Assembly: GCA_047495785.1 (NCBI GenBank)
Contig: JBLDXI010000020.1
Location: 2,604,001 to 2,668,000 of the forward strand
DNA from: Lepidodermella squamata
Lineage: Eukaryota > Animalia > Gastrotricha
Length of the DNA stretch: 64,000 nucleotides
Direction: 5' to 3'
Shown: positions 3,316 through 49,506 of the stretch, piece after piece
Layout of the letters: each line of letters begins with the position of its first letter
How positions within the stretch are numbered: position 1 is the stretch's first letter
Program-made: the position numbers and the translations under genes
The notes under the pieces: generated by a model
Told to the model about the DNA's origin: nothing
The model's database searches: none
The model's input: the letters and a program-made list of their open reading frames with translations, nothing else

Positions 3316-3669
3316 ACGTCGGAAAATTCTTGATTTGAAACAATTTTAATATTGTTTGCCGTGAAACTATTTGGCCCTGTTAATTTTGAACCTAAATCTA
3401 AATTCAGTTTCAAATTTTCAAATTTCTCTTTATTCTATGAAAACTTATTCCAAGTCGATATCTTATTTCGATATTTGAATTTGTATAGGTGTTCTTTTTT
3501 CAATAAAATGGAAATCGCTTTGAATAATCTGGACCTGATGAAAATTACCATTTTCCAAAAGACGGGAATTTCTCAAGTGATCTTGAGTCCACCTTCCAAA
3601 TTTGAAAAAATGCTTCAATTTTATTTATTTTGTGTTTTTAGATTTTTTCAATTTTTCTATTAATTTACG

Positions 3670-9549: not shown

Positions 9550-9636
9550 CCTCTGTGACCTCTGAACCTCTAAACCTCTGAACCTCTAAACCTCTAAACC
9601 TCTGAACCTCTAACCCCTTGAACCTCTGACCTCTGA
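9550..9636. repeat. Tandem 8-mer repeat (CCTCTRAA)n
   Basis: Directly visible run cctctgaa-cctctaaa-cctctgaa..., about 10 imperfect units. Confidence 0.85.
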
Positions 9637-11246
9637 GGTGCCTGTTGAGACAGAAAAATCATGCGGCAAATTTGATCGATCTCGAATTACAAATTTAATA
9701 AAAAATTTATTTAAAATGTATATTCTCAACGCAATTCAATCAATTCTATTATTTTTGCAAATAAACATTCGTCAAAAACTTTTTTCGACGATTTTTGCCA
9801 ATTATTGCCTCCTATGGCTCGCATCCTCAGGGAACTGGGAGCTGTGGGAACTTTGGCGACTTAGTCGCCCTAAGGAGCTCCGCTGCGCTCCGCAAAAATC
9901 CAGGAAAAGTGTCCCTAGTAGAAAGCATTGTTCCTCGGACTTCTTCGCAACTTTGTTGCAATCCTACTCAAAAACTGACCGAGATTTTGAATGGTATCTT
10001 CGGTAACTATGATTGGACCCACTCTGAATCGCTTAGACCAAAGACCAGTCGCCAATCGCCAAACGCCTGGTGCCTTTAGAAATCACATCTCCGAAGAAGA
10101 GTTCGTCCGACAAGGCGGCTGTCATGGTAGAACATCGTGCAATCGAAGTCTCGGCATCCCAGCACATGACACCTGACTGATACGAGCATCTCGTTTGGTG
10201 CCATTGACAAGTATAAATATTTCCTTCGAAAATACATAATTCGAGATTCGAGTACTGCTCCAAGCCAGAACAGGCTCTGCGTTTAAACCTTTCCAGCTCC
10301 TTTCGAGAGGGATCTCTATGATTGGGTTTGTTGAATACGGCGTGAAGATGCTACTTCAAAGAGCCAGAAACTTGCGTGCGAAACAATAGAAAGTATAAAC
10401 TCTTCATGTTTATCGGTGTTAAAATAATAGACCTCAGCATTCATATTCTGTAGTAGTAGTAGTATTAGTGTTCATTTCAGTCAACATTTCACTCATTGGC
10501 AGGGGAGGCCGCGAATTCAACCACCGCCCTCCAATGCTCGCAGCTTCCTTCAGACGTGTAAAGTCATTCTCGCTATTGATTTCGATAAGTGATTCGGGTA
10601 TGCGATAGACAGGAGACTATATGTGTGATCATTGTTCCATGATTCCATGATCATTGATGGCGACGGTAATTTAACTCGAGTATATATCGCTTTGTTGATG
10701 TCATTTGATAGCATAGCTTATATTAATTTTCACTTTCTGTCGGTTTCTGCATCTGAAGTTTAACTTGGGATAAGCGTTTCATTTCACATCTATACACATG
10801 CAAAGCAGTGTATACACACGGCATCGAAAAAGCTGGCTGACTATGCGACTTTCTATGGCCGATTTTCGACAAGGTGATAGTGCATTTTTTTCACTCCACG
10901 CGTCCATCTTATATCTTATAATGGAGTCTTGGAACTTTAGTGTCTACTTGTCGTTTCTTGCCACGGCATATCTTTCAACTTGCAAGCGGTGTGGCAAAAG
11001 GCAAAAGAAACTTGTGACGGGAAACAACTTGTTTGCTTCAAGTGAAACATCAACAAAAGATAAGATAATCGCTTACATATATCGTTACCTCAACCGCATG
11101 ACCGTTCACTTATCTTACCCGTGTCTCCATCGTGTGTTATCGTTCTCTAGTTGCCTGATTGGTATTAGCCGCGAGAGTGCGTTATTCTAATCACAACTCC
11201 GTTTTGTTATGATAGGCTTATCTCTTATCTCAAGTTATTAAGTTAC

Positions 11247-16280: not shown

Positions 16281-19200
16281 ATGAATTTGCCTAATTTTGT
16301 TTTCATCGCTTCAGTTTTGTTTAGTGGCCTTGGAGAGGCTAAAATAGAGTCGTTTTGCTCGTTCGAGGAATATGACCCGAAGTGTAATTTCAAGATTCCA
16401 CGAGAAGATCCGGAGAGGTTGCTGCAATGGGTTACTGTGACAGCCGACCAGTCAAAAGGCCCAGATTTGCCGAAAACTGACGCGGCAGGCGATCCGAAGG
16501 GGTCTTACATCTACGCAAAGTTCGGGAAGAGCACGGAAAATGCTGATGATGCGCAATTTCAGTCGAGATCTATCGTGTCAAGCGATGAAGTTGCTGCTGT
16601 TAGATTCAGTTACTACATTTATGGCACCAGATTGGCTCAAGTTATTCTATATCAAAAGGTCAGGGTTTAATCTTGAACTTCTAATGTATCCACAAAACTT
16701 CGAAAATTTGGCTGAATTCATTATTCTTCCAAGCTGTTTGAAAGCTGATTTTTTGAATATTTTCCGAGAGTTTATAAGGGTTACCGAACCGTAAATTTTC
16801 TTCAGGAGATGTCTATATTAAATTTTGCTTTCATTTTAGTGCAAATCCACCTTGAAAGTACTCTGGGATCAAGATGGATTCTCGAATTACGAGCCATCGT
16901 GGAGATCGGTTCAAATCCCGATTGAAACTACATCCTCCTTAACAGGCTGTACCTTGATATTCGCCGTTGAATATTTCGATAAAGCCAGCGAATTTCACGG
17001 GGCAATTGCTTTGGACAGCATCGCTACGTCAGCCACTGCATTTGACGTCGAACCGGAAAATGGGACATTTTGCTCGTTTGAATACCCGAAATCAAGTGGG
17101 AAACTGTGGTCACCCGTAAAAATGGAATCGGTCACCAGACCAGGTGCTAGAACTGGTACTTGGGACGTGATATCTGTCACTAGTGACCGTGATTTCATCG
17201 GGGTCGACCGGACTTTTTTGTCACCCCTGGGTCACGTGGCTCGAATGGCCGCGAGCAGTTCATTGGACGAGGCCGGGTGTTTTTCGTCCACCTTAATGGG
17301 AAATTTCCCAATCAGAAACCCATCTCGAGCTCCAAGGCAATGCCTGAGATTAGCGGCGAAATGGATGACAAACCAGCTCAATATCACAGAAAGAACAACT
17401 ACAGCTCAAATCTACGTCCACCTTATCGAAGATTCGACCTCAAAAATTGTTGGGACATTATGGTCCGGATCTCTTGCAGTCCAACCCGCGCTAGATATCA
17501 GATGGTGGACAACCTTACAGGCCTATCTCGATCTTAGAGCCTACGCCCAGGAAATTCGGACAGATTTTGACAATCCTAAAACTTATCGATTAGCAATTGA
17601 AGGCGTGATTTGTTCCGATCAATGGGTTCGATTGACTGGTATCGCTATTGATGATATCAGTTATGACTCATCGAATTGCCAATGGGCTGGCGATGAAGAT
17701 TTCGAAGTCGCAAATTCGAGGAGTTTATGGACCACTGAACCTGGGGTTAAGCTATGGAATTACGGCTGGCTTAGAGTGCCGGCTAACCACGGTTTCAGCT
17801 ACCTTAACCCACCTATTGATCACACTAAACTCGGCACGAAAAAGGGCTGGGTTGTTGTATCTGAGACAGATTTAACAGCGTTTTCCGATTTGAGTATCGA
17901 TTTACATCACGTGACGTCAGATTTTTGCGTCAGTTTCTGGATTTGGACGAAATTTGAGCCGGATATGAGCAGCAAATACGTGACAATTAGTAATTTTATC
18001 GATCAAGAAACACAACGCTATCAGGTCGATTTACCGAAAAATTATAACGAAGACTGGTTTCTGGTCACCCTGCCATTTTCAGCGACAACTTATTCAGTTT
18101 CGAGGGTCATAATTCGAGCTAGGGGTGGTTTTGCGATTGACGACCTAACATACACGCCGGGTCGGTGTAACCAGGGTAGAAATGTGATAGCGAAAGACCC
18201 GGTCCCGGATAATACCGGCGACTATTATTTGGCGGAAAATGGCGGAATTGCCTGTGATTTCGACGCGAAATGCGATTTTTGGACAATTGCAACGTCGAGT
18301 TTTATCGAAAATAACGATCATTTTGAAATTGTTAAGGCGGGTAGTAAAAACGGGCCGAGTAAGGACGCTTCTCTCAGCGATGGAAATTACGTCCAGCTGG
18401 TACCAAAAATCGGCACGGAACCCGACCAAACCTCGCCAACTGCCTTGATTTACTCGCAAGAGATTGATGTGGCTAATCACGGCTGTTTTTCGTTCGATTA
18501 CTTTGTATACGGAACTTCAACAGGCACATTAAAGGCCTATTTACTGTCTAAAACGGTTGAAATGCTTCCGATATGGGTCCGACACGGTTCGCAAAAAGAT
18601 TCGTGGCTCAGGGCTCAAATCGATTTGACCCAATTTCTAGAGACGAAAAATTCGAATTTTAAGCTGGTCATTGAAGCGGAACGATTTACTACCAGTTTTT
18701 CCGGCGCGATAGCTATCGATAATTTGAAATTGGAGGAGAAATGTGTTGAAAAAGTTCAGCCATCCAGAACTTGCTCTTTTGAAGGCATGGACCCACAAAA
18801 CGTTTGCACCCTGAAGCTTGATGGCGCTGAATCACCCGTTATCCAGGTGAATCAGCTACCTTTAGGTTCAGGCCTTCAAAACGACGCTTCCTTAGGAACA
18901 GAGCTCGGTCACGTGATTTTGCTGAATGGCTTCGAAAGTCAGAAGAAATCGTTCACATTACAACAGGACGAATTCGGCTGCATGTCCTTTGCCTACCAGC
19001 GTGGGACACCCTGCGCGAAATTCGCCATGACCCTGAAAGACGTGAAAAATAACCAGCTATACCGGCAGCATTTGCTGCTACCAGCCGGTGATACGGCAGA
19101 TTTCAACTCGTGGACGCGTTTATTCGTCGATTTGCCGCAGCAATTAGTCGCGAAAAGTCCGATTAATTCCGTAAATCAGCATCTTGTGACTATTGAAGTG

Positions 19201-22200
19201 TCCTATATTGAATCGGCGGGGTGTGCTTCGAATAGCGAGTTCAACTGGGCTGCTTTTGACGAGTTCATTTTTACGAAATCTAACTGCCCTCGGCCTTATT
19301 CCTGCGATTTCGAGCAATGCCCTCGTTTTGATATCGGAAATCTACCAACTGGAAATTCTTTGCCATGGCTGAGCCAAATTAATCAAAATCTACTCAAAAT
19401 TCAAGGCCCTGATTTTGACAGTATCGGCTATAATGGTTCAAAATCGTCTTACGGCCTTGTCGATTTGACCTCTGGTGATTTGCGTGAAAATTCGATTTTT
19501 TCGACTGAATGGTTGTATGACCCACCGAATTCCGGAAAACCACTCACCGTGACGTTTTTCTACCTTATCTCGCCATCCGGTCCGGTTATTGGTACCGGGG
19601 AGTTGAGTATTTTCCTCGAAACCCCTGGTAAAAAGTCGCTGATCTGGCAAACCGCCCAGGGCAGTGGATCGTGGCAGTACGGTCGAGCCTCGATTCTTCA
19701 ACCAAGCGTGTCCTATCGATTAATTTTTCAAGGCCGACGACGCGGATCGGTGGATAAATTGATGTTGACTATCGATGATATTAACATTCTACCGGGTTTC
19801 GATAGCGCAACCATCCCGTCAAGTGCTGACCCAGCTAAAACGTTCACGTGCTCATTCGACTGGAACGAGGATGTAGATAATTGCAACATCAACTGGCCGA
19901 AACAGTTGTTGAGTGATCCGAAGTCGACGAATATCGCATGGGCTGTTACTAGGGCTCAAGAATCACCCGAGCGTGACCTTCCGAAAATCGACTCAACTGG
20001 CGCGGCGAATGGTTATTACGCCTATGTTGCGATTAACAGCAAAGCAAGTGGCGCTACCAAGGCTAGACTCGACTCGGTACCTGTCAATTCGAATGAAAAA
20101 ATCGGCGCTATTCGGTTCCGGTATTACATTTACGGAACCAGTCTGGCTTCTTTGGAACTCGTGAAAACTGTGAGAAATAAAATTTTCGAATTTTCTATTA
20201 ATTTTCTAAAATTTTTAGTGCGGTGGGATTGATTCAATTCTCTGGCAAAATCTTGGCGTTAGCTCAACCTCTTCTAAATGGGCATCCCAGCAAGTTCTAA
20301 CCGGCGATATTTCAGGGTGCTCTATCGCTTTCGTAGCCAAAACAACCCAGATTTTTAACGGGGTTGTAGCCATCGATTCAATTGAAACTTCTTCTCAATG
20401 GCAAGAATTAGACGCAAATATCGACTCAACATGTACTTTTGAGTACGAAACTTGTTCAAAACGCTGGTCACCAGAAGCCTCGATTCGACCCTCAGTCGAA
20501 AAAATCGATTGGAAAATCGTGAAAGCCAGTGATGAGGCCTCCTTAAACGGAGCTGATGCTACGCTAAATTCACCCAACGGCCACGCTTTGGTAATGAAAG
20601 CTCCGGTAGGCGGCAGGGCGACTTGCTATTCCGGGGTCGTTCGAAGCTCGTTCAAAGTCGAAAACCCGTCCAAACACCCTGTTCAATGCCTTCAGATGAA
20701 AGCTCGAGTTCTAAGCTCGAAAATCGATTATACCTCTGCGGATATTTTCGTACATATCGCAGACCAATCTAGCCCGATTTGGTCAGGATCCTTAGCTCAG
20801 GTTCAGGCCACGTCAAAGCCTGAATGGCTGATAATTAACGCCAGGCTTGATTTAACAACCTGGGCCCGGGAGCAGCGAAATTCATTTGAAGAAACTAATT
20901 TTTCAGCTAATTTATTAATCGAAGGCCTAATTTGCGCTAAGGACGTAGTGGCTAATCTAGGAATTGCGATTGACGACCTTCGTTACAACGCGCAAAGCTG
21001 CCGAACTTCCCTTGATGACAATTTTGAGTTCGAAAACGAAATTTCAGTATGGAACCCTGCCCCGGGTGTCGGATCTACTGGGTTCAATTGGCTCAGGGTT
21101 CAATCGGGACATTCCTTCAGTTTCCTATCCCCACCTTCCGACCATTCCTATCCGGATGAGAAGGGTCGAGGGAATGCGTTAGTATCCGATGAAAGTACAT
21201 CCGCTAAGTCGGTTATAGTCGCGGATCTTGTTGATGTAACCTCGAAATTTTGCCTCAACTTTTGGATTTGGACCAAAGCTTCTGGGGCTGATAAATCACT
21301 GACCGTCGGGCTTAAAGATGGCGGCGATTACACGATTCGGACTGTTTCAAGCGCGTATAAAGATACCTGGGAGTTGGTTACCCTACCCCTGACCCCGGTC
21401 GGAAATTCGGTAACTAGGGTTCGAATTGAATCTAGAGGAGGGTTCGCAATAGATGATATCACCTACAGCAATAGTCCTTGTAAAATCAGGCCGTCAAAAG
21501 TTTTGAAAATCACCGCTCTTGGCTTGAGAAATTCCGATGAGAATTTGATCCCAGCGAATCCTATCAATAGAGCTGGGTTATATTTTTGCGATTTCGAAGG
21601 TCCCTGCAGCCGTTTTACTGTCGCAAGTTCGCCTGAAAACGAGCATTTTGAGGTTGTAAATGCAACTTACGGCTTTCAATCATTGAATGGGCCTAAATCT
21701 GACGCAACTTTACCAAAATCAACCTTGGGAAGTTATTTACTCCTCGTACCGAAATTGACTGGTTCAAAGCCTGATGTAACCGCCTTAACAGCTTACATTT
21801 ATTCCAACGATTTTAAAACGTCAGAATTTGGCTGTTTAACGTTTTCCTACTACATTTTCGGCCCTGCTACTGGCTCTATAAAGGTATATGCCTTAGCTGG
21901 CGGCGTCAATCAGCTACCTGTTGCGACAATTCGAGGTTCGAAACTCGATGAATGGGTGACTTATATGATCAGCATGTCAAATCTGGCCGATTCTCTGACC
22001 GAAAGTTTCCGTTTAGTCATCGAAGCGGAACGTTACGAGTCGTATTACTACGGCGGTATTGCGATAGATGACATTGAAATGTCGGATACGTGCTCGAAGC
22101 CGAGTGAAAAATTGGATGAGGATTACACGTGCTCTTTCGAGGGTCTCGACCAGGCGAATTGTGAGCCGGATCTAGATAGTGGTACTTTCAAAGTTCAGCA

Positions 22201-25200
22201 GGTCAAAGAACTCGAGTTGCAGACTGGTTTGAAAAGTGACGCATCGCTGAACTCGGAACTGGGTCACGTTTTATTTTCTCAATTTGGCGAAACGATGGAA
22301 ACTTTTATCCTAAGGTTCGATTTTAATTATTAAATTATTGAATTTTGAAATTATGAAAATTGAAAATTAAAATTTCGGATTTTCCATTTTAAAATAATTT
22401 TTTTATATTTTTGGTGTGCCAATTTAAGGTTCCAGTGCTGAATTTGAGTCTCCAGCACTAGATTTTCCCAAAGGATTCGAAAAATTTGGTAGTCGGGGTT
22501 GGATGCCTAAAATGGTATTAGAAATTATAGAATTTCAGAATAATTTTAGAAATTAAAAAAAAATCTTGAAAATTGGCGCAAAATAGGAAATAAAGTGAAC
22601 ATTAAAAATTCCCGCTTTAGTGCATTAAATTTCCAATTTCAATTTGATTTAGCATTTTCTTTTAATCTTGAAAACCGAAAATTCAGAGTGAAATTCACTA
22701 ATTTTCCTTGAATTTTTTTTCAGATATTCAGAGGCTTACAGTTGTTTATCCTTTGTCTACCAACGAGGCACGCCTTGCTCTCAAATCTGGCTCGGCATCG
22801 AAAACGACGATGGCTCATTGATCCGGCGTCACATTCTCGCTGCGCCGATCGGCGATAACGACGAATTCGGAAAATGGCGCCCAATTTCATTCGACCTACC
22901 CCGGTCAGTCCTAACAACAAGCGGAACCAGCCCAACTAAAATTAGTCGAATCAAAATCGGCGTAAAACCAGCTGGCGATTCTGAATTATTCGGCTGTACT
23001 GAGCAGGAAATTTTACAATGGGTTGCTTTTGACGAATTTTCCTTCTCAACCGACAGCTGCCAACGCCCGGTTACCTGCAACCCCGGTGGCCATTGCTTTA
23101 ATTTCGAAATCGGATCCTTACCCACAAATTACTACATGCCGTGGTTGGTTGGAAATGGCAATTCCAAGCTCAGCAAAATTACTGGACCTAGCTCTGATCC
23201 TATGGATTCAGTTCCGACTCGTTACGGCCTTATTGACCTAGTTAACGGACGGGGAAAAACCGATTTACCCGATACCGGGTTTTTCGCTACCGAATGGCTG
23301 ATCGGCTCTGATCAACCTTTAACCATCGAATTTTTCTATTTCATCTCACCATCTGATAGCCAGAATTCAGAACTGAGTGTATATCTCGAAATTTTGAATG
23401 GCGAAAAACAACTCATCTGGCGGATGAGTAAGGGCGACGCATCTTGGCAATACGGCCGGGTAACTTCGACGCCGAAATTCGGAAAATTCCGGGTAATTTT
23501 TGAGGGTAAAAGGCCTGAAAGTAAACAGGAATTAATGCTGGCTATCGATGATATAAGCTTGATTGATGGCTTTTCCGGGGCTATAATTCCGAATGATGCC
23601 AATCCGAACCCGGTTGAACCTACTACTGTTGCGCCAATAACGACTCAAGGTGTTACTACAACCTTAAAACCGGTTGTTACAACGGTTTTGCCAACAACTG
23701 AAGGTCCAGTAACTTCGACAAAAATTCCGATTGAAGTGACTACAACTCAAAAAATCGACGAAACAACTACAATGAATAACCCTGTTACTACTACAGGAAT
23801 TTTGACGACTGGCTCTGAAACCAGTTTGGCCACTGAAACTACCCAGAACTTGGATTCGACCACCCAGTCTATAACTGCTGAACCCTCTACTACGGATTCT
23901 AACTTGGAGACAACCACCCAGTCAATAACTGAACCTTCTGTTACTACCAAAATCGACATTGACACGACTACTAGCAATGATATTTCGACTACCGAGTCGA
24001 ATTTTGAGACTTCGGCCGTTACAACAACAGAAAATACGGAAACTACTGCGACTGAAGTAATAGTCGATACTACAACCGTGGAAATTGACCCAGTTACTAC
24101 AACACCCAGCCTGGTTGAAACTACTACTTCCAAGGAAGAAATTACAACTACAGCTCAGGTAGACGAATCGACTACAACCGCGATTTCATCCCGACCTTCA
24201 ACAGTCCAGCCGCCGCCAACCCTCGACGAGGTGTACCCGGTTATCTACGGCGCTATGATAGTCGACCAGGTTATAGTGAATAACCGCGTAATAACCTGGC
24301 AAGACGTCTCCGAATCATCGGCAATCAGCGAATCAGTATCAACGATAATTCGGCGACAATTGATTCTGATTTACACGCGGGCGGGTTATGAGCAGTCTGA
24401 TCTAACGATTTCTAGGCTGTTTGAAGTTAAACAGTCGACGAATCGGGCTGGCGAGAGTCAAATCGGAGCGGATTATCGAGCGTATTTTTCGGACCCTATT
24501 AGCAAGGTGACGGATTTGGTCAAGTTTGGCTATCAGGTTGCGGCTCAGATTGATAGGACTGTTACTACAATGGCTAATGAAGGAATTTTCGAGCCGACCT
24601 TTGGCTCGGGATCTATCAAGGTTACGGTCGATAGCGTTGGATACATCGAAAAACCAAATACTAACTCAGGTAATAACATTTTATCCTCATTTTTTCCAGC
24701 CATTTTTGAAGTTTTTGGTTTAATTCAGGAATGTCTTTCTTCGATCGAACTTTTTTGAATTTGAATTTAAAATTTAAAATTTCTATCAAAATTTATTTTA
24801 ATTAATTTCTATTCAATTTATAATTTAATTTTTAACTAATTTTAATTTTAATTTTGATCTTGAATTAGGATTAATTTTTTTTTAGGAATTTTGATATTTT
24901 TCTCTGTTACTCTTAAATAATTTTTATATTTTTATATATTTCAGGCGAGTTGGATGCTGGTGAAATTGCCGGTATTGTTATCGGGAGCATTGCCGGTTTC
25001 GCTCTAATCTGCGTCGTCGCATTTTTCGGCTTCCGATTTTTCAAAAAGCGCCAATCCCGCGCCAACGATATGAGGCCCTCACGAAGCAACTACTACGACT
25101 CAGCTGCTTATGAAGACGAGTTGGAAAAGCAACGCTCCACCCAGTTTGAGCTATCGGTAAAGCGGAAGGACACAAACCGGAGTAAATCGAGCTCGAAATC

Positions 25201-38090: not shown

Positions 38091-39265
38091 ATGGAAAAGT
38101 TTCGCGATTTGTGGCACAACAGTCTATTGTCACCTGTTCACGCCGAGCAGAGAGAATTAGCCGGCGTCCTAACCGATGACCACATCATCTACGGCGGCCA
38201 TGCTATGATGCCGTTTTTCCCCTGCTTCTGGCCTGTCATTCGCAACTTCCCAGTCGACCCGAGTGACGTCATCATCGCCAGTGTCCCAAAATCAGGCACA
38301 ACATGGCTACAACACATTGTCTGGCTGGTCATGACCGGCGATTTTGAGACTAAGGTCTCAATTGATCGGCGGATCCCGTTTCTCGAGTACCCGAACCCGC
38401 CTGTCCCGCAAACCGTGGTTGAACTAGCTGAACGCAAACCGCCTCGCCTCCTTAAAACGCATGCGGCATCTAAATTTTTGCCGACGAATTGGCACAAGGC
38501 CAAGCTGATTTACATCTATCGCAACGTCAAAGACGCTATGGTGTCGTTTTTCCACATGATCAAAAATTTCGGATATCCTGGAAATTTCGACGAATTTGTG
38601 CGGAAGTACCTTGATGACGGAAATGGTAATTTTATCCTGCAATGAATTTGATTTTTTTCAAAAATTTTCGAAAAATATCAAATTTCAAATATTAAAAAGT
38701 TTTTTAAATCTTCAAAATTATTTAAAATATTTTTCAAATTTCCAAATATTCAAAATTTTTTGAAATATTTTTGAAATACTTTTCAAATTTTCAAATATTC
38801 TCAAATATTTTTATCAACTTCATTCATCTGAATTATTCCATTTTTCTTAATTTTTTTCCTCAATTCTCAGTAATGGAGTCACAGCCGTACGGACCTCATG
38901 TTGAAGGCTACTTGGAACTCGAGAGAACCCACAAAGATCACGCGCTAACCTTGTGCTATGAGGACATGATGAAAGACCGCCGAGCCGGAATTGTCAAAAT
39001 CGCAAAATTCCTCGGCAAAGACCTGAGCGACGAAATGATAGACAAAATCTACAACGACTCGTCGTTCGAAGCTATGAAAAAGAATGAAACTGTCAACTAC
39101 AGCTGGCGAGAGTACGACATGGTCGAGGGACATACGCCGTTCATTAGACAGGGCAAGGCTGGAGGTTGGCGGGACTATTTCACCGATCCGGCTTTGCTGG
39201 CTGAATTCGATGCTTACCTTGCCAAAACTGTTGCGCCGAAAATTCTCGAAAAAACATCTGCCTAA
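38091..39265 (+). CDS. Cytosolic sulfotransferase copy 4 (most diverged; longer intron)
   Basis: Motifs SVPKSGTTW, KTH, YRNVKDAMVSFF and RQGKAGGW; intron ~38627-38870. Confidence 0.92.
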
Positions 39266-39350
39266 AAATGAAATTTTTGACTCAAAAACAATGCGACGTG
39301 ATTTTATTGCTAAATTTTAACGCAAAAATAAAATTGAAATCATGTTAGTT

Positions 39351-42300
39351 TCATGAGCTCTTCATCAAAGGTTGACGCCATTCCATCCGAAGTTTGGCTG
39401 CTGATGACAATTCTGGGGACAGGCGGTTTCTTTTAAAAAATTGAAATAAATCAGAATTAAGTAATAAACTATTTTTTCTCACTCTTTTTGTGAAAATCGA
39501 TCCCAATTTGAGGTCAATAAGGGACACGCTTTTATGCTCGCTAATTGTACCACTTTTCAATTTCGCATCGGCCAATCGCATCGCTTTTCTCTCGGACCGC
39601 TATACAGATGAATGTATTGAATATTGAAAAGGAGGAATTTCAATAAATTTATACCTCAAGTTGCTGCATCAAACAAGCGACGACTAGATTAACCAAGAAA
39701 AATTGAGTGACCGCGAAAAATGACGTGAAATAAATCGGCGCCAGGGTTGTAATTAACGCCTCGTCATTTCGATCTTTATTGACCCTCGCCTCAGGATCCT
39801 TCGCGAAATCGTTCGCATCTTCGAGCACACTTTTCCAATCATCGCCTGTCGACACGCGAAACAGCGTGAGAACAGCCATGCCGAAATTTTGAAAATTCGC
39901 GTGGCGAGAAATTCCATCGCAATGATTTTCCGGGCACTGAAGATTCCCTAACAATTCCACGCCCAGAGTTGCGTAGATGAAGAAAATCAGGCCGAATAAC
40001 ATTGCCATATTGCCAACCTGCGGCAAAATCTGGCGCAGAGTGTTTAAAAGCGATTGAACGCCCTTTGCGACTTTCAGCAATTTCAATATTCGGAAAACTC
40101 GAATTATTCGAACGACTCGAAGAATTCCAGGGTCTAATGCGAACGATTTGTAATCATCGACTAGCTTTTCGAAAGCAATCTGTCCCAAGCTGGAGATAAC
40201 AACGAAAAAATCGAGCCGGTTCCAGGAGTTGCGGAAATATTGGCGAGGTCCGTACGCAATCAGGCGTAAAATTGAGTCGAGTGTGAAAATTATTGTGAAT
40301 ACGAGATCGGTTAGTTTGAGAGCTTCGAAACTTTCCCTCGGCATTTGGTAATATTCGGCTGCCATGACAAAAATATTCGCGATTATCAAAATCGCATTTA
40401 TAAGATCGAGGAAGATGCTTTCGCAAATTCTTATAAGAAATTTTTGCCATTTCGGGTAATTTTTTGCTCGAATTTCCTGAATTTTAGGTTCGATTTTTAA
40501 CTCGGTATGTCGACCAGGAGACGTCATCGTGGTGAGGGTTGAGCTTGTATCACCGGCTAGTTGTCCCCTCATGTGGTTGTAGTTATTGACTATCACGCCC
40601 ATGAACATTTCAACCATGCAAAAACCGATAATTAGGATGAAAGACAGGAAGAATAGGATGCGCCAGGGTGCGTAATTTCGAACAGGCTGGAATGGAAATT
40701 AACAAAAAAATTCAAATGATTTTCACAAAAATACCTGTAAATCCATGTCGACGCAATTTAGGCCATTTTGAGCAATGTCAACCCATCCGTCGAATGTTGC
40801 GACAATCTTCGAAATTAAAAAAAATAATAAAATAAAAGTGTTCAAGACAACTTACTGTCAATGCTGATAATGCCTGGAAAAAGTCGTCGAAATTGTACTC
40901 TTCACGTTTCCATTCTAAACCATCGATCGATAGGCAATCACTTCGATTTTTTACCATCTCCAATTGCGATTCCAAGTAATGTTTCGAATGATTTGAGTGA
41001 TTTTTCGAATTTTCTTCACTGATCGCACATTCGTGGTAACAGCCTCGGAGTAGCTGAAGGCCCAATACCGCAAACGTCACCAGAAAAATTCCGCAAATTA
41101 TGAAAATATTTCCAATCGATTTCATCGAAACAGCCAAAGTGCTCGAAACGGATTTCAACGCTAAGAATGAAAATTAAAAAAAAAATTAATTATAGAGAAA
41201 TTTAATAATAAATCAATTAATATTTTCAATTAATCAAATTTTAATTAAACAAAAATTTACCAGGCGTTTTGTTAATGGCTCGAAGGGGTTTGAACGCTTT
41301 CAACAGCCTCAAAGCTCTCAGGACTCGAAAAATCGAATTTCCCTCGCCATCTTTCAATTCAATCAAATCAATTGTAATATCAAGAATTGAGACGAGGACA
41401 AGCAGAAAATCGACGCAATTCCAAACATTTCGCAAGTAAGAACCCGGGCCTTGAACAAAACCAAGCGCAATGATTTTGATGAGACATTCGAGCAGAAAAA
41501 TTCCGGCGAAAAAGTAGTTAGCCGAATCGAGGCATATCCTTTCGATACTGCCGTTTTCAATCGAAGGTCTCTCCAAGGCCAAAGCGAGGCAACTCAAAGC
41601 AACGATAGCCAGCATGACGTCATCGTACTTCGGGGTCGAAATCAGCCAAGCGAGAAATTCTCGCAATCGATTGTCCCTCGCGAATAGATACAAAGAATAA
41701 TCTTTTCTAGGGTCACATGTCGAGTTCTTAGTCGACTCTTTATCAGCAAGATTTTCTTGAATAATCCACTGCTCCTTTTTCAACTTGTTCCAATTTCTTA
41801 ATCTCGCGAATTTAGTTCGCATTCGTATTGACCAAGGAATTTTTTTCGGCATATCTATATCGACATCGATATCGTCCGGGAAAGGCGGCGGCGGGGCAGT
41901 TTTGATTTCATGGCTCCGAGTCGAGAAGAAAGAAATCGTCTCACTGTGCAGCGAAGCGTTTCGGTTGCTAGCGAACGAAAAGTGGGACATGGTTGGCGAT
42001 CGAGTTATCGAGGTCAAATCTGAGAGTGAAGACGATCGGCAACTAACTCCGTCGTCAATCGATTGGAAACTTTTCCGGTAATTTTTCCCAGGTAATCTCG
42101 GGCTTAATTCCAGCCCCCTTTGCAGTCTACGCTGAGCATTTCGATTGTAGATATTAGGGCTATTCCTAGCCCGTACCATTTGCCGGCGGCTGTGGCGAAA
42201 ATTAGCCATGTGAGGGGTTGAAATTGGTTGAAGCTCAACGGCCATTTTGTAGGACGAAAGTGATGTTAAATCTCCGTCTGGGTTGGAAATTTTGCCGCAA

Positions 42301-45300
42301 GTGCTTGGGGGCCGGCTTAGGATTACGACTGGATGGCGGCGGATAGCACGGCTATAGGATTGCCGCCTTTTCCGCTGAATCCTTGGTCCAATTGTTTCTT
42401 TCTTTTGCCAAGCCTAGAAAATAATCAAAAAGCTCCCATTATAAGTAATTAAAGGAAAATTTCTAACAGATGCTAAGGAGAGGAATCTCATTGCTTTGGC
42501 AACAGGAATAGCTTTGTTTTGAAATTTCTTGCCAGTTGGAGACGAACCGACGTCAATTATAGCTGAAAATTGACATTTTTTGAAAATTTTACGAATTTTT
42601 ATTCATTTACCAAGCAGCATGCTTAAGATGACGTAGTTGCCGAACATGAGCAGGAAAACGAAATACACCGCAGGCCAGTAAGATGAAGCTGATTTCATGG
42701 CTTGCCTCAAAGGATCCGTCCAATCGTCATCTTGGGTTAGGATCCTTAAAACAGTCATCAGTGACGCTAGCATTGAATCGAAATATTGAGGCCGATCTTT
42801 GTCGCATTCATGGTTATGAATTCGGCTTGAATTTAGCAATGTGAAGTTCGAATCCAATACTGGCAGGCACTTCAAATCACATCCGAATAGACTTATCCTT
42901 TGAAAATCAGGAAGGTTCAGCGTGAAGTTCCTTTCGGAAGGAAAAACATACCCTAAAACTACGAAAATGAATACGAATAGGCTGAAAAGTAGCAGGAAGG
43001 GCGTGATACTGTTCATTGTTCGATACATGGCCGTCAGTTGTTTTTGTAGAGTTGGCGAAAAACGAAGCATTTTAAATAGTCGAAGAAGCCTGAGGGTGCG
43101 GAGAACAGTCAGGCCTGTCGCGTTTCCGACACCACTTTGAGCCAACTCCACCAGGCTGAAGGGGAAAAAATTGAAAATTAAAAAAAATGAAGTTGAATTT
43201 TTCCTGTAATTTTGAACTACATGGTGCCCCAGAAGCTGCGCGACTACTTATTCAATAAGCAACCTTTTGTATATTTAATTATTTGTATATTGTTGTAAAT
43301 TAAAATTTAATTCAACAATTTAAAAAAATTGAATCTACCGAGAGAAAATTCCAACTTTTATCCGCGATTTAACCGAAGAAATAAATAATTTGCCGGAGAA
43401 ATCTCGGAAAACCCCGATGGTAACTGGTTCGGTAATTTTCGGTATTTTACCCGGTTGGACCTAATTTTCCGGACTTTTTTAATCCCATTAACAAGTGGCA
43501 TACTAGATTACTATCGGGTCTTCCTGTTACCGGAACCAAATTTAAAGTGAACGGAACCAAATTTGCTGCAGCGGAACCAAATTTTAGAATTTTCTAGTGG
43601 CCTGAAATCGCTTTTCGGATATTTATTGCATGTCAAAATTGGCCCCAATAATTCTAGAAAATTCACCAGTGAATTCAGCGCAACATTCTCTATAAGAATT
43701 AATACGCAGTGTTCAATTCAGAATTCATGCTTAGCCTAAAATTCTTAGAAATATTCAAAAAATGACTCTTGGCATATTTCGAGTTTGGTTCCGCAAAAAG
43801 CAAATTTGGTTCCGCTACAGCGTATTTGGTTCCGATACAGCAAATTTGGTTCCGCTCACTGTAAATTTGGTTCCGCTAAAAGATATTCCCATTACTATCC
43901 CCGTGATTTTTTTATTTTTTCTGAAATTTGTCTGGCCGTGAGATGTAACTTTGCTTCTCATTTCAGAGTTTCTGAACCCTTTTCCGTGTATTTGTTTTGC
44001 TTGCATTACTTATGGGACACGTAATACAAGCTTAGAATTATTTTTTTAATTAATTTTTTTATAGGTAGTACCGTATCTTCTAGATAGCCAATAATTCAAA
44101 ATGAGGTTCAGCTAGAAGTAAAATTAATTGACATTTTTTGTTAATTTTGAAAAATCGAGCCAACCTGATAATGACAACAACCAAATCGAGCATGTTGAAA
44201 CCATCTCGAATATATTCGACGAATCCAAAGGCAAACAGCTTTACAACGAGTTCCAACGTGAAAAGAGCCGTTAAAACAACGTTTGTAATATCAACGGCGT
44301 AGGTCAACCAATCCGGCTGCTGATAATGCTCGACCGCCATCGATATTGTACTGACAATGATTGCTAAGGCAATGAGGCCTTGAAAAATTTCTCCCAGAAG
44401 AATCCGCCTCAAATAAAGACGGTATTTCCGAAATGTTTGGCGGCAATTTATCTCCGGAATTTTTTCATTGTCCGAACTATTTTCGTCAAATTTTCCGCTT
44501 CTGTCGCTACAACAAGGCAGTTTTTTCTTCAAAAAATCGAACATCTCGTCGATGAGTAATGTGTAAAAACTTCGCGGGTCGTTCATTTTCGGCAGATTTT
44601 CGGCAGACGTCAAAATCAACTCTGGAGTATCAGCTCTCGGAAGCGCCATGGCGTTATTAACGTTAGATAACCAAGCGCCAACTGAAGATTGGCGTCGCAT
44701 TTTAGCCTCCTCAATATTTTCTTCCTCCTTAAAAAATTGAAAAAATTGAAATTCAGGAACCTAAAACCTAAAATTTTACAATTTTTTCAGCCAGGCGCCG
44801 TTTCGTTTGGGGAATTTGAACTGCTACGACGATGAAGGTCAAGTTTGAAACTCCAAAGTTGACGACCAGAACCAGTGTTACAAAGTAAGGCCAAACCCAA
44901 AACGAACTAATTAAAATTCATAACCAGATTTTCGGAATTTTTTTAGTTACCTGACATCTTGAACAGAGTACATAATTGAGCTCCAACCCTCGGGAGAAAC
45001 AGCCTGAAATTTTTTGTTTCAATTCAGAAATTATCGCGGTGAGTTTTATTACCTGGAAAATGGTAATGAAAGCTATGAAAATGTTGTCGAAACCGATTCC
45101 GCCGTCCATAGGATTGCTGTCACCGGCTTTGCAGAAATTATAAGAGGGGATCAGTCGAGAGCAGAGATGTTCTTTGTCCTCATTTTCCTCGAAAAGTTCA
45201 TGACACATCGATTCTTGGATTCTAATTTAAAATATTCAAACAAATTCAGAAAAATGTGAATAAATTTACTCATAATTAGGAATATCACTGCACTGGGAAT

Positions 45301-46514
45301 ATCCGCCGCATGTAAAATCTGGAAATGAAGGCGTCACGTAAATCCTAGGCATTTCGATCGATTTTTGATGAGCCGAAGTTTTGTTTGATCGATTTGTATA
45401 GATTTGATAACTGATCAGATAATTGCGTTCGATTTCCAACATTTCAACGGTAAAACGGCTATCATTATGCAAATGTGACACTGGGGGTTGGAAAAAGCAT
45501 CGTTGCCGTAATAAACCGGCCCAAATTTGAACGCCAATAATGCCGAAAATGAAGTAGACGAACAGCAAGACGCCAATGATACTGCTCAAGGTAGGTAAAA
45601 TATCGGTTAGCAGTGTCACGAGCAATCTCAAGCCTGAAGAAATTTCGTTTTAATACATTTGAAAAATCGAGGAATTTATACTTGGAATTCGTTTTATTGC
45701 TCGGATGGGTCTCAAAATTCTGATGACCCGAATAAAGGTCCAATCGGTTGAATTCGAAGCACTATCGCTGCTTTGAAAGCTCAAATAATCAGCAAAACTA
45801 AATTAAGAAAATTGAAAAATTAAACAGATTAATCACGTAAAAAAAAATTACCTAGCTAAAACGATGAGAAAATCCAGCCGGTTCCAAACGTCGGCTAGGT
45901 ACGCGCCACGGTGACCAATTGCGCATTTGGACAGCATTTTTACGAGCATTTCGAAGAGGAAGAAAGCGCTAATGACCATATCGATGATTCTCAGGGCGCG
46001 ACATTTGGCCGTCCGGCACTGTCCGAACTTCATGTTATCTTCACACGGGTCGAAAGTTGCCATGGCAACGCAATTGATTGCTATCACAATTAGGCTGATC
46101 CTTTCAAACCACTTGAAAAAAATTGGATTATTTTTTATTTTATTTTCTCATTAAAAGGTTGACTTATCTCCAGTTGACGAGCTTTGTCGCATTTTTTCGA
46201 ATTATGTTAGTTTCTTTGAAGCAGAAGAAAGACTTGTTTGACGTTAGGATTTGGCAAAATTTATTTTCGAAGCAATTGCTCTCCACCCATCTCAAGGCTA
46301 CAGCTGTTGAGGTTGTTCTATGAGAAATTGCCTCAGATCCATGAAGGCTAGCTATTTCGAGCTTGTCCTTTGTCATATTTCGGAAAATATCTAAGTATTC
46401 TTTTGCACCTGGTTGAGGGTTTCGGTGCATTGCTATACGTGAGCCGGTAATATTAGTCGATATTTTTAGTGCGCCTTTTACGTTGAGGCCGCTGCTCATC
46501 GTAGGAGGGGTCAT
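39351..46514 (-). CDS. Divergent T-type voltage-gated channel alpha1 (Cav3 family)
   Basis: Four 6-TM repeats over many exons. Cav3-diagnostic segments [35 protein letters not shown], a gating-brake-like DPRSFYTLL, and [25 protein letters not shown]. All four S4 segments are intact. Pore loops SPEGW / TQDDDW / TFDGW / TGDDW. Confidence 0.9.
43220..44024. mobile_element. Family-B MITE copy in a Cav3 intron, interrupted by a nested insertion
   Basis: Degenerate TIR CATGGTGCCCCAGAAG... and ...ACTTATGGGACACG. The interior is collinear with 25403-25791. Confidence 0.75.
43516..43890. mobile_element. Foldback/MULE-like non-autonomous element nested in the MITE
   Basis: 9-bp TSD ATTACTATC (43507-15 and 43891-99), GGG...CCC termini, and subterminal ~20-bp repeats containing CGGAACCAAATTT (3 left, 5 inverted right). 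Confidence 0.85.
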
Positions 46515-47793: not shown

Positions 47794-49506
47794 ATGGCTG
47801 TTTCCATTTACCTGCAAATTCTGCTAATAACGGGGATGGTTGTTCAGGCAACTACGTCATCTTACACCTCGCGTAAATTGGAAGAAATCAAAAGCAACAT
47901 GTCCCCCGACCTCGTCAAGCTGATTTCAACAACTAAATACGCTCTTTTCGTCGCTGATGTAGGATCTCGTTCCCACGCCAAGCCGATGATTGCCATTTCT
48001 CAAGAAATGATTAAACGCGGCCATCGAACAGCCATCGCCAGCGCCATGGAAGAGGCGAGAACATGGGCAAAACCAGGTCAATTTGGCAATTTTATCAAGC
48101 TGAAGTCGACCGAAGAATACCTCAACCCTGGTACTCATTCGAATCATACAAGCAAGGTCGCTACTGATCTCGTAAGGGGAAACCCTGAGGCTCCAGGTAA
48201 AATTAATTTTTCGGAAAAATTATTAAAAAATTTTAAAATTTTAGTTTTTGAATTGGTCGCAAAAATGCGCCTATTCATGCTGGCAAACTATTATGAGGGC
48301 GCATACCGCAGTTTGAAAGATGCTTGTGAGCAAGATCGGCCTGACATTCTCGTCTGTGATTGGATGTCCCTTTCCTGCCCGGACGTGGCCAATCTATTGA
48401 AAATCCCATTTGTGGCCACTGGCCCGAATTCAGCGTTGCCAATGTTGCCAAAAGTGCCGAGCTGGCTGCCGACCTTGTTCGCACCGAAAAGCCCATATGA
48501 AGCCACTTTTTTCGAACGACTCCACGCAAAATTCGTCATTTTACCGCAATTTCTCTACTACTTCAAACCGTATTTCTCCGGACTGGCGGCCGCGAGGCAA
48601 AAGTTGGGAATCGCCCAAGATGTTTCTTACAAAAACAAACATTTCTTCGTTCACAATTACTTCGGCTTCGAACACGCCCGCAGTTTATCGCCATTCATCC
48701 ACGAACTCGGCCCGATTGTCGAGCCTGATATCTATGAAATGGACAAGGATTTACTGAACTGGCTTAATCAAGCCCACGAGCGGAAAGAAAGCGTTGTCTA
48801 CGTCGCATTCGGCTCTGCTTTTGTTCCCACGGACGAAACGATGCAAGCTTTGATTAAAGGCATTCTTCTCTGCAATCAGCATCAGTCGAAAGTCAACCTT
48901 CTATGGTCGTACGGTTTGTCCGATCTTGATAAATCTGTACCGCAGGAGGTGAAGGGTTCTTCTAATCTTCGAATGGAAAAACGAGTTGCTCAAATCAAGG
49001 TGTTGAACCACCCAGCTGTTCATCTTTTTGTTAGCCACGGTGGAATGGAGAGCGTTCTCGAAGGCTTTTTAGCCGGGAAGCCAATTATTGTAAATCCTCT
49101 CTACGCTGATCAGCCGATGAATGCAATGCGGGCGAAAGAGCTCGGGGTGGCTGAAATCATCGAAAAAGGACCAGCCGACGCTGTTCAACGGCAAATGTGT
49201 GCCTATTCGAGTCAATTATTAACTCGTTTCCGAAGTACAGAAGAAACGTTGATGCAAAGTCTGGCGAAAACTGGCGCGGCGTTCTACTACAACGCGCAGA
49301 GGTTCGAACAGGCGGTGGATGTCATTGAAATGGAAATGGCAATTGGGTCAGATCACTTGCGCATGTTTGAAGATGAGGCTGCGTTCTACAGGATTTATGA
49401 CCTTGACCTTTACGCAGCGCTTTTATTGCCTGTTCTTGCAATTTTATTGCTTTTAAAGCGACGTTGCTGCAAAAGCAAAAACTCATCTAAATCAAAGAAA
49501 GAATAA
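47794..49506 (+). CDS. UDP-glycosyltransferase (GT1/UGT), ER-membrane type
   Basis: Signal peptide, catalytic His (GSRSH), UGT signature VAQIKVLNHPAVHLFVSHGGMESVLEG..PLYADQ, C-terminal TM and a Lys-rich ER-retrieval tail. One in-frame 48-nt intron at 48197-48244. Confidence 0.92.
   Translation: MAVSIYLQILLITGMVVQATTSSYTSRKLEEIKSNMSPDLVKLISTTKYALFVADVGSRSHAKPMIAISQEMIKRGHRTAIASAMEEARTWAKPGQFGNFIKLKSTEEYLNPGTHSNHTSKVATDLVRGNPEAPGKINFSEKLLKNFKILVFELVAKMRLFMLANYYEGAYRSLKDACEQDRPDILVCDWMSLSCPDVANLLKIPFVATGPNSALPMLPKVPSWLPTLFAPKSPYEATFFERLHAKFVILPQFLYYFKPYFSGLAAARQKLGIAQDVSYKNKHFFVHNYFGFEHARSLSPFIHELGPIVEPDIYEMDKDLLNWLNQAHERKESVVYVAFGSAFVPTDETMQALIKGILLCNQHQSKVNLLWSYGLSDLDKSVPQEVKGSSNLRMEKRVAQIKVLNHPAVHLFVSHGGMESVLEGFLAGKPIIVNPLYADQPMNAMRAKELGVAEIIEKGPADAVQRQMCAYSSQLLTRFRSTEETLMQSLAKTGAAFYYNAQRFEQAVDVIEMEMAIGSDHLRMFEDEAAFYRIYDLDLYAALLLPVLAILLLLKRRCCKSKNSSKSKKE

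What the first reader, a model, noticed from the sequence alone, without database searches (positions are those of the whole stretch)
39351..46514. T-type (Cav3) channel with a non-canonical E-D-D-D selectivity filter and a DII pore insertion
Seen: pore loops [18 protein letters not shown] (42723-42731), DIII ATFDGW and DIV STGDDW. Known: Cav3 channels have an EEDD ring with TLEGW / TQEDW / SKDGW / TGDNW. Here the DII Glu is Asp with one extra acidic residue, DIV gains an Asp at +1, and DI has Pro before the Glu. The frames examined and all four S4 sensors are intact, so this looks like a functional, fast-evolving paralog. Inference: altered ion selectivity or divalent/proton block, and possibly an undescribed channel subtype.
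Basis: partly seen in the sequence, partly recalled or inferred. Interest (0 to 1): 0.75.

Follow-up and report, generated by a model that had tools for sequence, protein, structure and literature searches.

The report
T-type calcium channel, unusual acidic pore
This is an intact gene for a T-type (Cav3) voltage-gated calcium channel in a small invertebrate whose ion-selecting pore reads E-D-D-D with one extra aspartate, not the E-E-D-D that reviews call invariant; it is one of at least 14 such divergent genes in this genome, and no current has been measured.

Summary
A 16-exon minus-strand gene (39351-46514, about 1798 aa) encodes a four-domain channel. Its pore loops read AVSPEGW, LTQDDDW (DDD at 42731-42723), ATFDGW and STGDDW, and all four S4 sensors are intact.

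Its DIV exon matches solved Cav3 structures at 1e-125, against 1e-86 for Cav1. It sits on the Cav3 side of a 100/100 branch.

It is not a lone oddity:
- The genome has 14 Cav3-type loci and none has the canonical TQEDW.
- Twelve of them have Asp at the DII ring position.
- The one-residue DII insertion is shared with two paralogues (C42, C13) and an environmental relative.
- Only the third Asp (Gly in those relatives) is private to this gene. The DIV +1 Asp recurs in three other paralogues.

Synonymous sites against the sister copy are saturated. Where dN/dS could be computed it is 0.09-0.2.

I read it as a working low-voltage-activated channel with the most acidic filter of the family, probably still calcium-preferring but with altered divalent and proton handling. 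That is inference; expression and currents are untested.

Reviews state that Cav3 is "always EEDD" and present as one or two genes in invertebrates. The scan already reported paralogues of this gene on other contigs (s1-422071, s1-374252, s1-407495). Exons were searched one by one and never joined.

The parts
39351..46514 (-). Whole Cav3-type channel gene. The 16-exon model gives about 1798 aa, with the stop codon at 39353-39351 and an AATAAA near 39308.
   Evidence: Each exon was checked on its own for an open frame, its phase and its splice dinucleotides. The gene is collinear with canonical Cav3 P0005 and P0004 and with the C42 paralogue.
46167..46514 (-). Exon 1: N-terminus up to ...KLVNWR. 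It is followed by an intron with AT-AA termini instead of GT-AG.
   Evidence: The junction sequence is conserved with C42, which has no intron there. The same /ATAAGT...CAA/ arrangement occurs in the C12 paralogue.
45852..46111 (-). Exon 2: DI S1-S3, including the Cys-rich S1-S2 loop (PCEDN..C..C).
   Evidence: Pfam Ion_trans 1.2e-11. It is 70% identical to C42.
45682..45797 (-). Exon 3: DI S4 ([14 protein letters not shown]).
45053..45633 (-). Exons 4 and 5 (45633-45270 and 45221-45053): DI S5, the turret and the P1 helix.
44951..45003 (-). Exon 6: DI filter AVSPEGW. The ring Glu is at 44991-44989 and Pro sits at the -1 position.
44165..44906 (-). Exons 7 and 8 (44906-44780 and 44727-44165): DI S6, the I-II linker ([13 protein letters not shown]...) and DII S1-S3.
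42952..43155 (-). Exon 9a: DII S4-S5. It is followed by a 54-nt in-frame GT-AG intron at 42951-42898.
   Evidence: C42 has an intron at the same place.
42611..42897 (-). Exon 9b: DII turret with three Cys, P1 helix, filter LTQDDDW and S6.
42723..42731 (-). The three Asp codons GAT GAC GAT. They are the ring position, the +1 position and the inserted residue.
   Evidence: MAFFT places the gap in canonical Cav3 just before the Trp.
41261..42562 (-). Exons 10 and 11 (42562-42468 and 42413-41261): II-III linker and DIII S1-S4.
40856..41160 (-). Exon 12: DIII S5 and turret.
40735..40806 (-). Exon 13: DIII filter IVATFDGW. The ring Asp is at 40791-40789, and Phe stands where canonical Cav3 has Lys or Arg.
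39655..40686 (-). Exon 14: DIII S6, the III-IV linker and all of DIV. The filter STGDDW is at 39852-39835.
39351..39599 (-). Exon 15: short C-terminal tail of 82 aa with no IQ or GPHH module.

Best explanation
The region holds an intact, selectively maintained gene of the Cav3 (T-type) voltage-gated channel lineage. It is one of 14 Cav3-type loci that arose by a lineage-specific radiation in this small invertebrate.

What is shown:
- The protein has four 6-TM domains with full S4 sensors.
- Its pore ring reads Glu-Asp-Asp-Asp.
- Its DII filter loop is one residue longer than in any described Cav3 (TQDDDW against TQEDW).
- Its DIV loop has Asp instead of Asn at +1.

History inferred from the paralogues: first came Glu to Asp in DII, which is common to most of the radiation. 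Then one residue (Gly) was inserted before the Trp in the ancestor of the window/C42/C13 group. Last came Gly to Asp in the window gene alone, a single GGT-to-GAT type change.

How it probably works (inferred, not measured): it is a low-voltage-activated cation channel. Seven acidic side chains line the filter region, against five in canonical Cav3. Both DII and DIV carry the "DDW" arrangement that makes engineered CavAb and the "beacon" class of channels calcium-selective. I therefore expect it to remain calcium-preferring.

Its ring site should be weaker and wider, as in the engineered Cav3.1 EDDD mutant. That mutant shows less Cd2+ block, more Mn2+, Cd2+ and Na+ passage, and slightly more negative and faster activation. 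The outer divalent and proton binding site should be stronger.

Within the family it would be the most calcium-committed member. Paralogues with TQDAW, TQDSW, TQESW or TRDNW are candidates for sodium-permeable T-type channels.
For: Family:
- The DIV exon matches PDB Cav3.1/3.2/3.3 at 8e-125 to 2e-115, against Cav1.2 at 1e-85, Nav1.5 at 2e-74 and NALCN at 1e-27.
- The DIII exon's best match is Cav3.2 at 1e-65, on the orthologous domain.
- Trees built from the single DIV exon separate Cav3 from Cav1/2 and Nav at 100* and 100/100*.
- Window plus C42 are supported at 98/84*. With environmental P0035 the support is 100/100*.

Integrity:
- All 16 exons are open and their phases agree. Fourteen of 15 introns are GT-AG.
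- The odd first intron is conserved in paralogue C12.

Constraint:
- Against C42, dN is 0.28-0.48 and dS is saturated. dN/dS is 0.09-0.2 in the two exons where it could be computed.
- The motif codons differ synonymously between copies.

Shared pore changes: the pore-loop table for 14 loci plus the environmental relative comes.

No canonical copy:
- The only TQEDW-coding DNA in 121 Mb is a chance hit.
- A canonical Cav3 query finds only the same 14 loci.

Loop geometry: an AF2 model of relative P0039 puts Q-D-D-G in the coil between P1 (which ends at T156) and P2 (which starts at W161).

Functional analogies:
- The Cav3.1 EDDD mutant is described in bioRxiv 10.1101/626069.
- The beacon Asp and CavAb TLDDWSD are described in PMC10120453.
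Against: - There is no expression or splicing evidence. Searches with the DIV exon found no transcript-derived or near-identical protein.
- No orthologue close enough for a recent dN/dS was found, so recent loss of function cannot be excluded.
- Which of the three Asp faces the permeation path is unknown. The only model is of a relative that lacks DI and has low local confidence (pLDDT 56-71).
- The gating-brake second helix was not detected by sequence search.
- The predicted direction of the selectivity change rests on analogies with mutants of other channels. Those analogies pull in opposite directions: EDDD lowers divalent affinity, while extra outer Asp residues raise it.
Confidence: 0.7

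Rival explanations
1. The pore changes are functionally near-neutral. The channel is an ordinary calcium-selective T-type channel. Glu to Asp is conservative, and the extra acidic residues sit outside the constriction and change little.
For: - The ring stays fully acidic and the DII +1 Asp is retained.
- The Cav3.1 EDDD mutant still gives T-type currents with only small gating shifts.
- PMC10120453 states that channels with an Asp at the beacon position are calcium-selective whether the ring residue is Glu or Asp.
Against: - The same mutant work reports changed Cd2+ block and higher Mn2+, Cd2+ and Na+ permeability.
- A one-residue lengthening of the filter loop is unprecedented among 50 Cav3 representatives.
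- The paralogues vary widely at exactly these positions: DII +1 is D/A/S/N/G and DIV +1 is N/D/K/R/H. That looks like functional diversification, not drift at neutral sites.
Confidence: 0.2
2. The channel has lost calcium preference. It works mainly as a sodium or non-selective cation channel, a T-type-derived substitute for a sodium channel.
For: - EDDD raises monovalent permeability in Cav3.1.
- Natural Cav3 variants can be more than 90% sodium-carrying without any ring change (PMC4436565; PMC9694082).
- A longer DII loop could widen the pore.
Against: - This copy keeps the DII +1 Asp and adds two more Asp residues, one in DII and one at DIV +1. In the published classification that predicts calcium selectivity or strong calcium block.
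- No turret Lys could be assigned as a neutraliser.
- Paralogues with neutral residues at +1 are better candidates for this role.
Confidence: 0.08
3. The gene is a recently dead or unexpressed copy of a large family, or the DDD is an assembly error.
For: - No transcript evidence was obtainable.
- The gene belongs to a 14-member family in which redundancy is plausible.
- Intron 1 lacks GT-AG termini.
Against: - About 5.4 kb of coding sequence in 16 exons has no stop or frame break, even though amino-acid identity to the nearest copy in the aligned exons is only about 38-70%.
- All S4 charges and pore helices are conserved.
- The odd intron is conserved in C12.
- The insertion is shared by three other genes with different codons.
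Confidence: 0.03

Closest known systems
Canonical Cav3 T-type channels (human Cav3.1-3.3, PDB 6KZO, 9AYG, 7WLI; Lymnaea LCav3; C. elegans CCA-1; Trichoplax TCav3)
   Same: - Four-domain architecture and full S4 sensors.
- Best sequence match in every domain tested.
- Cys-rich DI S1-S2 loop and Cys in the DII turret.
- The Q-x-x-x-TK-R-R motif after IS6.
- No AID, IQ or GPHH modules.
- Asp at the ring positions of DIII and DIV, and Asp at DII +1.
   Different: - The DII ring residue is Asp, not Glu.
- The DII filter loop is one residue longer, and the extra residue is acidic.
- DIV +1 is Asp, not Asn.
- DI has Pro instead of Leu before the Glu.
- DIII has Phe instead of Lys or Arg before the Asp.
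- The C-terminal tail is very short.
- It is one of 14 genes, not one or two.
Engineered Cav3.1 pore mutant EDDD (Garza-Lopez et al., bioRxiv 10.1101/626069 and their earlier permeation study cited there)
   Same: It has the same ring composition, E-D-D-D. This gene is a natural counterpart of that mutant.
   Different: The mutant has no insertion, no extra Asp in DII or DIV, and sits in a mammalian background. Its properties were measured; here nothing has been measured.
Paralogues in the same genome (C42, C13) and the environmental relative P0039 (ENA ERZ23486787), all with TQDDGW
   Same: - Same one-residue-longer DII loop and same Asp-Asp pair.
- Same QAVS(L/P)EGW in DI and (T/S)FDGW in DIII.
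- C42 has the same exon structure.
   Different: - The inserted residue is Gly in all of them and Asp only in the window gene.
- DIV +1 is Asn (C42), Arg (C13) or His (P0039) instead of Asp.
CavAb, the NavAb channel engineered to TLDDWSD
   Same: The Asp-Asp-Trp filter motif, which the window gene carries in both DII and DIV, is the motif that confers calcium selectivity on CavAb (as described in PMC10120453).
   Different: CavAb is a homotetrameric bacterial channel with the motif in all four subunits. There is no homology at the level of the gene family branch.

Membership tests
Cav3 (T-type) lineage, by descent | Four homologous 6-TM domains in one polypeptide, each with a positively charged S4 | tested here: met
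   Pfam Ion_trans hits lie in exons of all four domains. The gene is collinear with P0005 and P0004. The S4 sequences were read.
Cav3 (T-type) lineage, by descent | Closer in sequence and in trees to Cav3 than to Cav1, Cav2, Nav or NALCN | tested here: met
   The DIV exon matches Cav3 at 1e-125 against 1e-86 for the best non-Cav3 hit. The DIII exon's best match is Cav3.2. Trees give 100* and 100/100*. The DII exons alone barely discriminate.
Cav3 (T-type) lineage, by descent | No Cav-beta binding AID in the I-II linker, and no GPHH or IQ module after DIV | tested here: met
   Pfam finds only Ion_trans and PKD_channel in the linker, DIV and tail exons at E up to 0.1. No GY..WI motif or IQ motif is seen on reading the exon translations.
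Cav3 (T-type) lineage, by descent | Helix-loop-helix gating brake in the proximal I-II linker | tested here: inconclusive
   The first-helix motif [13 protein letters not shown] resembles the canonical TQFSETKQRE. A candidate second helix, [18 protein letters not shown], was not matched by BLAST or phmmer.
Cav3 (T-type) lineage, by descent | Cys-rich DI S1-S2 loop and a Cys in the DII turret that bridge the voltage sensor and the pore | tested here: met
   PCEDN..GQC..KC is in exon 2 and C..C...C is in exon 9b. The feature is described in PMC9694082. The disulfide bond itself cannot be tested here.
Canonical T-type channel as defined in reviews (EE(D)DD filter) | Ring of Glu-Glu-Asp-Asp at the narrowest site | tested here: not met
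   DII has Asp (GAT at 42731-42729), so the ring reads E-D-D-D. The reviews that say "always EEDD" are PMC4436565 and PMC10120453.
Canonical T-type channel as defined in reviews (EE(D)DD filter) | Asp at DII +1 (the "beacon") and Asn at DIV +1, with a three-residue Q-E-D loop before the Trp | tested here: not met
   The DII +1 Asp is present under the MAFFT alignment. However, the loop has four residues (Q-D-D-D) and DIV +1 is Asp. The loop lengthening is supported by the AF2 secondary structure of relative P0039.
Canonical T-type channel as defined in reviews (EE(D)DD filter) | Low-voltage activation with fast inactivation and slow deactivation | not testable with these tools
   This needs electrophysiology.
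Cav1/Cav2 high-voltage-activated channels | EEEE ring, AID and IQ domain | tested here: not met
   The ring is E-D-D-D. No AID, IQ or GPHH module was found. The gene falls on the other side of a 100/100 branch.
NALCN and Nav1/Nav2 | Lys or Ala in the ring (EEKE, DEKA, DEEA) and a DII loop one residue shorter than in Cav | tested here: not met
   The ring is all acidic and the DII loop is longer, not shorter. PDB E-values are 1e-27 for NALCN and 2e-74 for Nav, against 1e-125 for Cav3.

The most novel reading that the evidence does not exclude
This animal lineage has replaced the single canonical EE(D)DD T-type channel of other invertebrates with a radiation of at least 14 Cav3 genes. Their filters have diversified at exactly the positions that current theory says set the Ca2+/Na+ choice:
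- DII ring: Asp or Glu.
- DII +1: D, A, S, N or G.
- A one-residue loop insertion in DII.
- DIV +1: N, D, K, R or H.

On this reading the window gene, with DDD in DII and DD in DIV, is the extreme calcium- and divalent-binding end of a natural allelic series. The series does by gene duplication what molluscs and nematodes do by alternative splicing of exon 12. If so, the family is a ready-made natural test of the "beacon" model of selectivity.
Probability: 0.35. Interest if true: 0.8.

Novelty: new variant of a known kind. Interest (0 to 1): 0.62.

Why it matters
Reviews of four-domain channels state that the Cav3 ring is EEDD "from choanoflagellate to human", that the DII +1 Asp is universal apart from one cnidarian gene, and that invertebrates carry one Cav3 gene, or two in cnidarians and flatworms (PMC4436565, PMC10120453, PMC9694082).

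This genome breaks all three statements. This gene is the most extreme case for negative charge in the filter.

Natural, selection-tested variants at the ring and +1 positions are what is needed to test how short, wide Ca2+/Na+ filters choose ions. They include a change in loop length that nobody has engineered. The proteins are small enough (about 1800 aa) to express.

The finding also bears on how an animal can diversify excitability by duplicating T-type channels.

Tried and rejected
- **Nematode origin:** suggested by the TTTCAG acceptors and roughly 50-nt introns. The SL1 leader is absent from the genome, and earlier scan notes propose a gastrotrich. I could not test the organism.
- **COX1 barcode:** the assembly has no COX1 match.
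- **A canonical Cav3 elsewhere in the genome:** rejected.
- **More relatives carrying the insertion:**
  - The word-indexed protein search with the DIV exon found only distant Nav fragments.
  - The JGI metagenome scan returned three canonical Cav3 fragments.
  - P0035's contigs are cut before DII.
- **An alternative DII turret exon (12a/12b type) in the 1009-nt intron:** none was found, only a foldback repeat.
- **Gating-brake detection by BLAST or phmmer:** no signal for the second helix.
- **Per-exon dN/dS against C42:** dS is saturated in most exons.
- **Weaker four-domain loci (C21, C2, C25, C54, C9):** I replaced that step.
- **Folding or searching the spliced full-length protein:** not done.
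- **Pfam:** failed on a frame slip of mine and was corrected.
Full report
**What is there**

The window is part of a 121-Mb, 151-contig eukaryotic assembly; it lies at G000:C20:2604001-2668000. Between 39351 and 46514 the minus strand carries a compact gene cut by very short introns.

Exon-sized open frames match Pfam Ion_trans in four successive blocks. I read the pore loops from the DNA.
- DI is AVSPEGW.
- DIII is ATFDGW.
- DIV is STGDDW at 39852-39835.

I derived a 16-exon model and checked every exon on its own for an open frame, its phase and the flanking dinucleotides.
- All exons are open and their phases agree.
- The lengths sum to 5397 nt, about 1798 aa.
- Fourteen of 15 introns are GT-AG.
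- Fourteen introns are 44-100 nt long and one is 1009 nt.

I did not hand a spliced model to any tool. Every search used single exons by reference.

All four S4 segments keep their Arg/Lys periodicity.

**Which family**

The DIV exon (322 aa) matches solved Cav3.1, Cav3.2 and Cav3.3 at 8e-125 to 2e-115. The next best are Cav1.2 at 1e-85, Nav1.5 at 2e-74 and NALCN at 1e-27.

The DIII voltage-sensor exon is best matched by Cav3.2 on the orthologous domain, at 1e-65. The DII exons discriminate poorly.

A HMMER search of 1.84 billion representatives with the DIV exon returned Cav3 proteins at the top: fish, Hydra, a nematomorph and a filarial nematode. None was nearly identical.

Trees built from the DIV exon alone put the window gene on the Cav3 side of a 100* branch and a 100/100* branch.

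Pfam finds no GPHH, IQ or AID-type module. The Cys-rich DI S1-S2 loop and the turret cysteines typical of Cav3 are present.

The first helix of the gating brake is recognisable ([13 protein letters not shown]). The second was not detected by search.

By descent this is a Cav3 gene. By the review definition of a T-type filter (EE(D)DD) it is not canonical.

**It is not alone**

The genome has 14 Cav3-type loci: this one on C20, and others on C42, C13, C12, C15 and C38 (duplicated on C112, probably a haplotig), plus eight in a tandem cluster on C32.

I read their pore loops.
- DII reads TQDD(G/D)W in three genes: the window gene, C42 and C13.
- It reads TQDDW, TQDAW, TQDSW, TRDDW or TRDNW in nine.
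- It reads TQESW or TQEAW in two.
- None reads TQEDW.

DNA able to encode T-Q-E-D-W occurs once in the whole genome, in non-channel sequence. A canonical Cav3 used as a query finds only these same loci as strong matches.

Among 50 Cav3-class representatives from other organisms, DII is TQEDW in 33 of the 35 that could be read. The exceptions are one TQDDW (a tilapia Cav3.2-like protein) and one TQEAW. None has an extra residue.

An environmental relative, P0039, comes from an ENA metagenome. It is a single 1094-aa ORF and carries QAVSLEGW / TQDDGW / SFDGW / TGDHW.

In the careful tree the window gene is sister to C42 (98/84*). Environmental P0035 lies outside them (100/100*). The whole radiation forms a 98/95* clade, apart from the long-branched C15.

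The insertion-bearing genes form one clade in the best tree, but with weak support of 67/36. A single origin of the insertion is therefore compatible with the data but not proven.

**Order of events (inferred)**

MAFFT aligns TQ-D-D-G-W with TQ-E-D-gap-W. This suggests three steps:
1. The ring Glu became Asp.
2. One residue was then inserted just before the Trp.
3. In the window gene alone that Gly became Asp. The window codon is GAT, against GGA, GGC or GGT in the others.

The DIV Asn-to-Asp change (GAT against AAT) recurs in C32-A, C32-E and C12. The Pro before the DI Glu is shared with C42 only.

**Is it maintained?**

Against C42, dN per exon is 0.28-0.48 while dS is saturated. In the two exons where dS could be estimated, dN/dS is 0.09 and 0.2.

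The transmembrane exons are 57-70% identical and the turrets 35-40%. Codons of the conserved filter residues differ synonymously among copies.

Intron 1 lacks GT-AG. It reads TGG AG|ATAAGTC...TTTCAA|G TGG, which gives AT-AA termini. The C12 paralogue has the same arrangement. C32-F has AT-AC at this site, C32-A and C32-H have GT-AG, and C42 has no intron there. I take it to be a conserved unusual intron, not a lesion.

An in-frame GT 12 nt upstream is an alternative donor.

I found no evidence on expression.

**How it probably works**

An AlphaFold2 model of P0039 was built with 27 aligned Cav3 sequences. Its mean pLDDT is 57.7, and 56-71 around the DII pore. It places Q157-D158-D159-G160 in the coil between the P1 helix, which ends at T156, and the P2 helix, which starts at W161.

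So the extra residue lengthens the filter loop itself. This is weak evidence: the model is of a relative and lacks DI.

The engineered Cav3.1 EDDD mutant has the following properties (bioRxiv 10.1101/626069):
- It is less sensitive to Cd2+.
- It is more permeable to Cd2+, Mn2+ and Na+.
- It activates slightly more negatively and faster.

On the other side, PMC10120453 says two things:
- An Asp at the +1 "beacon" position gives calcium selectivity whether the ring residue is Glu or Asp.
- TLDDWSD is what turns NavAb into a calcium channel.

The window gene has Asp-Asp-Trp in both DII and DIV, and seven acidic filter residues against the canonical five.

I therefore commit to this reading: a low-voltage-activated, still calcium-preferring channel with a weaker ring site and a stronger outer divalent and proton site. 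I put the whole reading at about 0.7. The structural and evolutionary part is close to certain; the permeation part is about 0.5-0.6.

The rivals are near-neutral changes (0.2), a mainly sodium-carrying channel (0.08), and a dead gene or sequence error (0.03).

**Comparison with what is known**

PMC4436565 states that EEDD is present in all Cav3 channels in every known animal species.

[quoted passage not shown] PMC9694082 states that the DII outer Asp is universal except in one anthozoan gene.

I found no paper linking Cav3 with gastrotrichs or rotifers, and none describing a natural EDDD Cav3.

The gene is therefore a new variant of a known kind.

**Earlier notes of this scan**

On other contigs of the same genome the scan had already reported three related things:
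- a Cav3-like gene with E/D/D/D plus a one-residue DII insertion (s1-422071);
- an EDDD Cav3 (s1-374252);
- a five-gene T-type cluster (s1-407495).

My own reading of C42, C13 and the C32 cluster agrees with them.

The "probable gastrotrich" label (s1-374127, s1-422687) is not tested here. I showed only that the nematode SL1 leader is absent, and the assembly gives no COX1 match.

Nothing in the window looks human or viral.

Noticed in passing
window 46112-46168 (minus); L025 about 9281-9699 (minus); L022 about 1012-1275: Intron 1 of the window gene has AT-AA termini (/ATAAGTC...TTTCAA/) at the junction ...NW(R)|WFER. The C12 paralogue has the same arrangement. C32-F has AT-AC at this site, C32-A and C32-H have GT-AG, and C42, C13 and several others have no intron. 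So this is a minor-type or atypical intron site evolving within one gene family.
   Followed up: partly
window 43509-43897: The only long intron of the gene (1009 nt) holds a foldback. Its arms are at 43509-43582 and 43824-43897, each 74 nt and 82% complementary. They are built of roughly 21-nt subrepeats (AAATTTGGTTCCGC...). This is probably a small inverted-repeat element. There is no alternative turret exon.
   Followed up: partly
G000:C32:4334000-4487000 (L017-L024), C12 (L025), C15 (L027), C38 (L028): The other Cav3 paralogues vary at the positions thought to set the Ca2+/Na+ choice. DII +1 is D, A, S or N. Arg replaces Gln in TRDDW and TRDNW. DIV +1 is N, D, K (C32-B) or R (C13). C12 has DIII LDDW and C15 has DIII FDNW.
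   Followed up: partly
P0029 (Rotaria sordida CAF1358221.1) and P0031 (Oreochromis XP_039472111.1): A bdelloid rotifer Cav3-like protein has DII ISIQKDW, with Lys at the ring position. A tilapia Cav3.2-like protein has TQDDW. So departures from EEDD exist in public annotations outside this genome too.
   Followed up: no
G000:C38:596000-606000 and G000:C112:43000-46300: Two contigs give identical scores for the same Cav3 locus. This is probably an uncollapsed haplotig or a very recent duplicate.
   Followed up: no
window 38091-39265 (+), 47794-49506 (+), 16852-24758 (+), 1917-5315 (+): The neighbouring genes are a two-exon sulfotransferase-like gene converging on the channel's 3' end, an intronless 570-aa UDP-glycosyltransferase, three large ORFs with MAM domains, and two Tudor-domain ORFs.
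   Followed up: partly
L015, L016, L030 (ENA ERZ23486787, ERZ23486764): One metagenome sample set holds relatives of both the C13-type gene (P0039) and the window/C42-type gene (P0035). P0039 is encoded as one 3.3-kb intron-free ORF covering DII S3 to the C-terminus. An uncultured relative of this animal therefore has the same channel subfamilies with fewer introns.
   Followed up: partly
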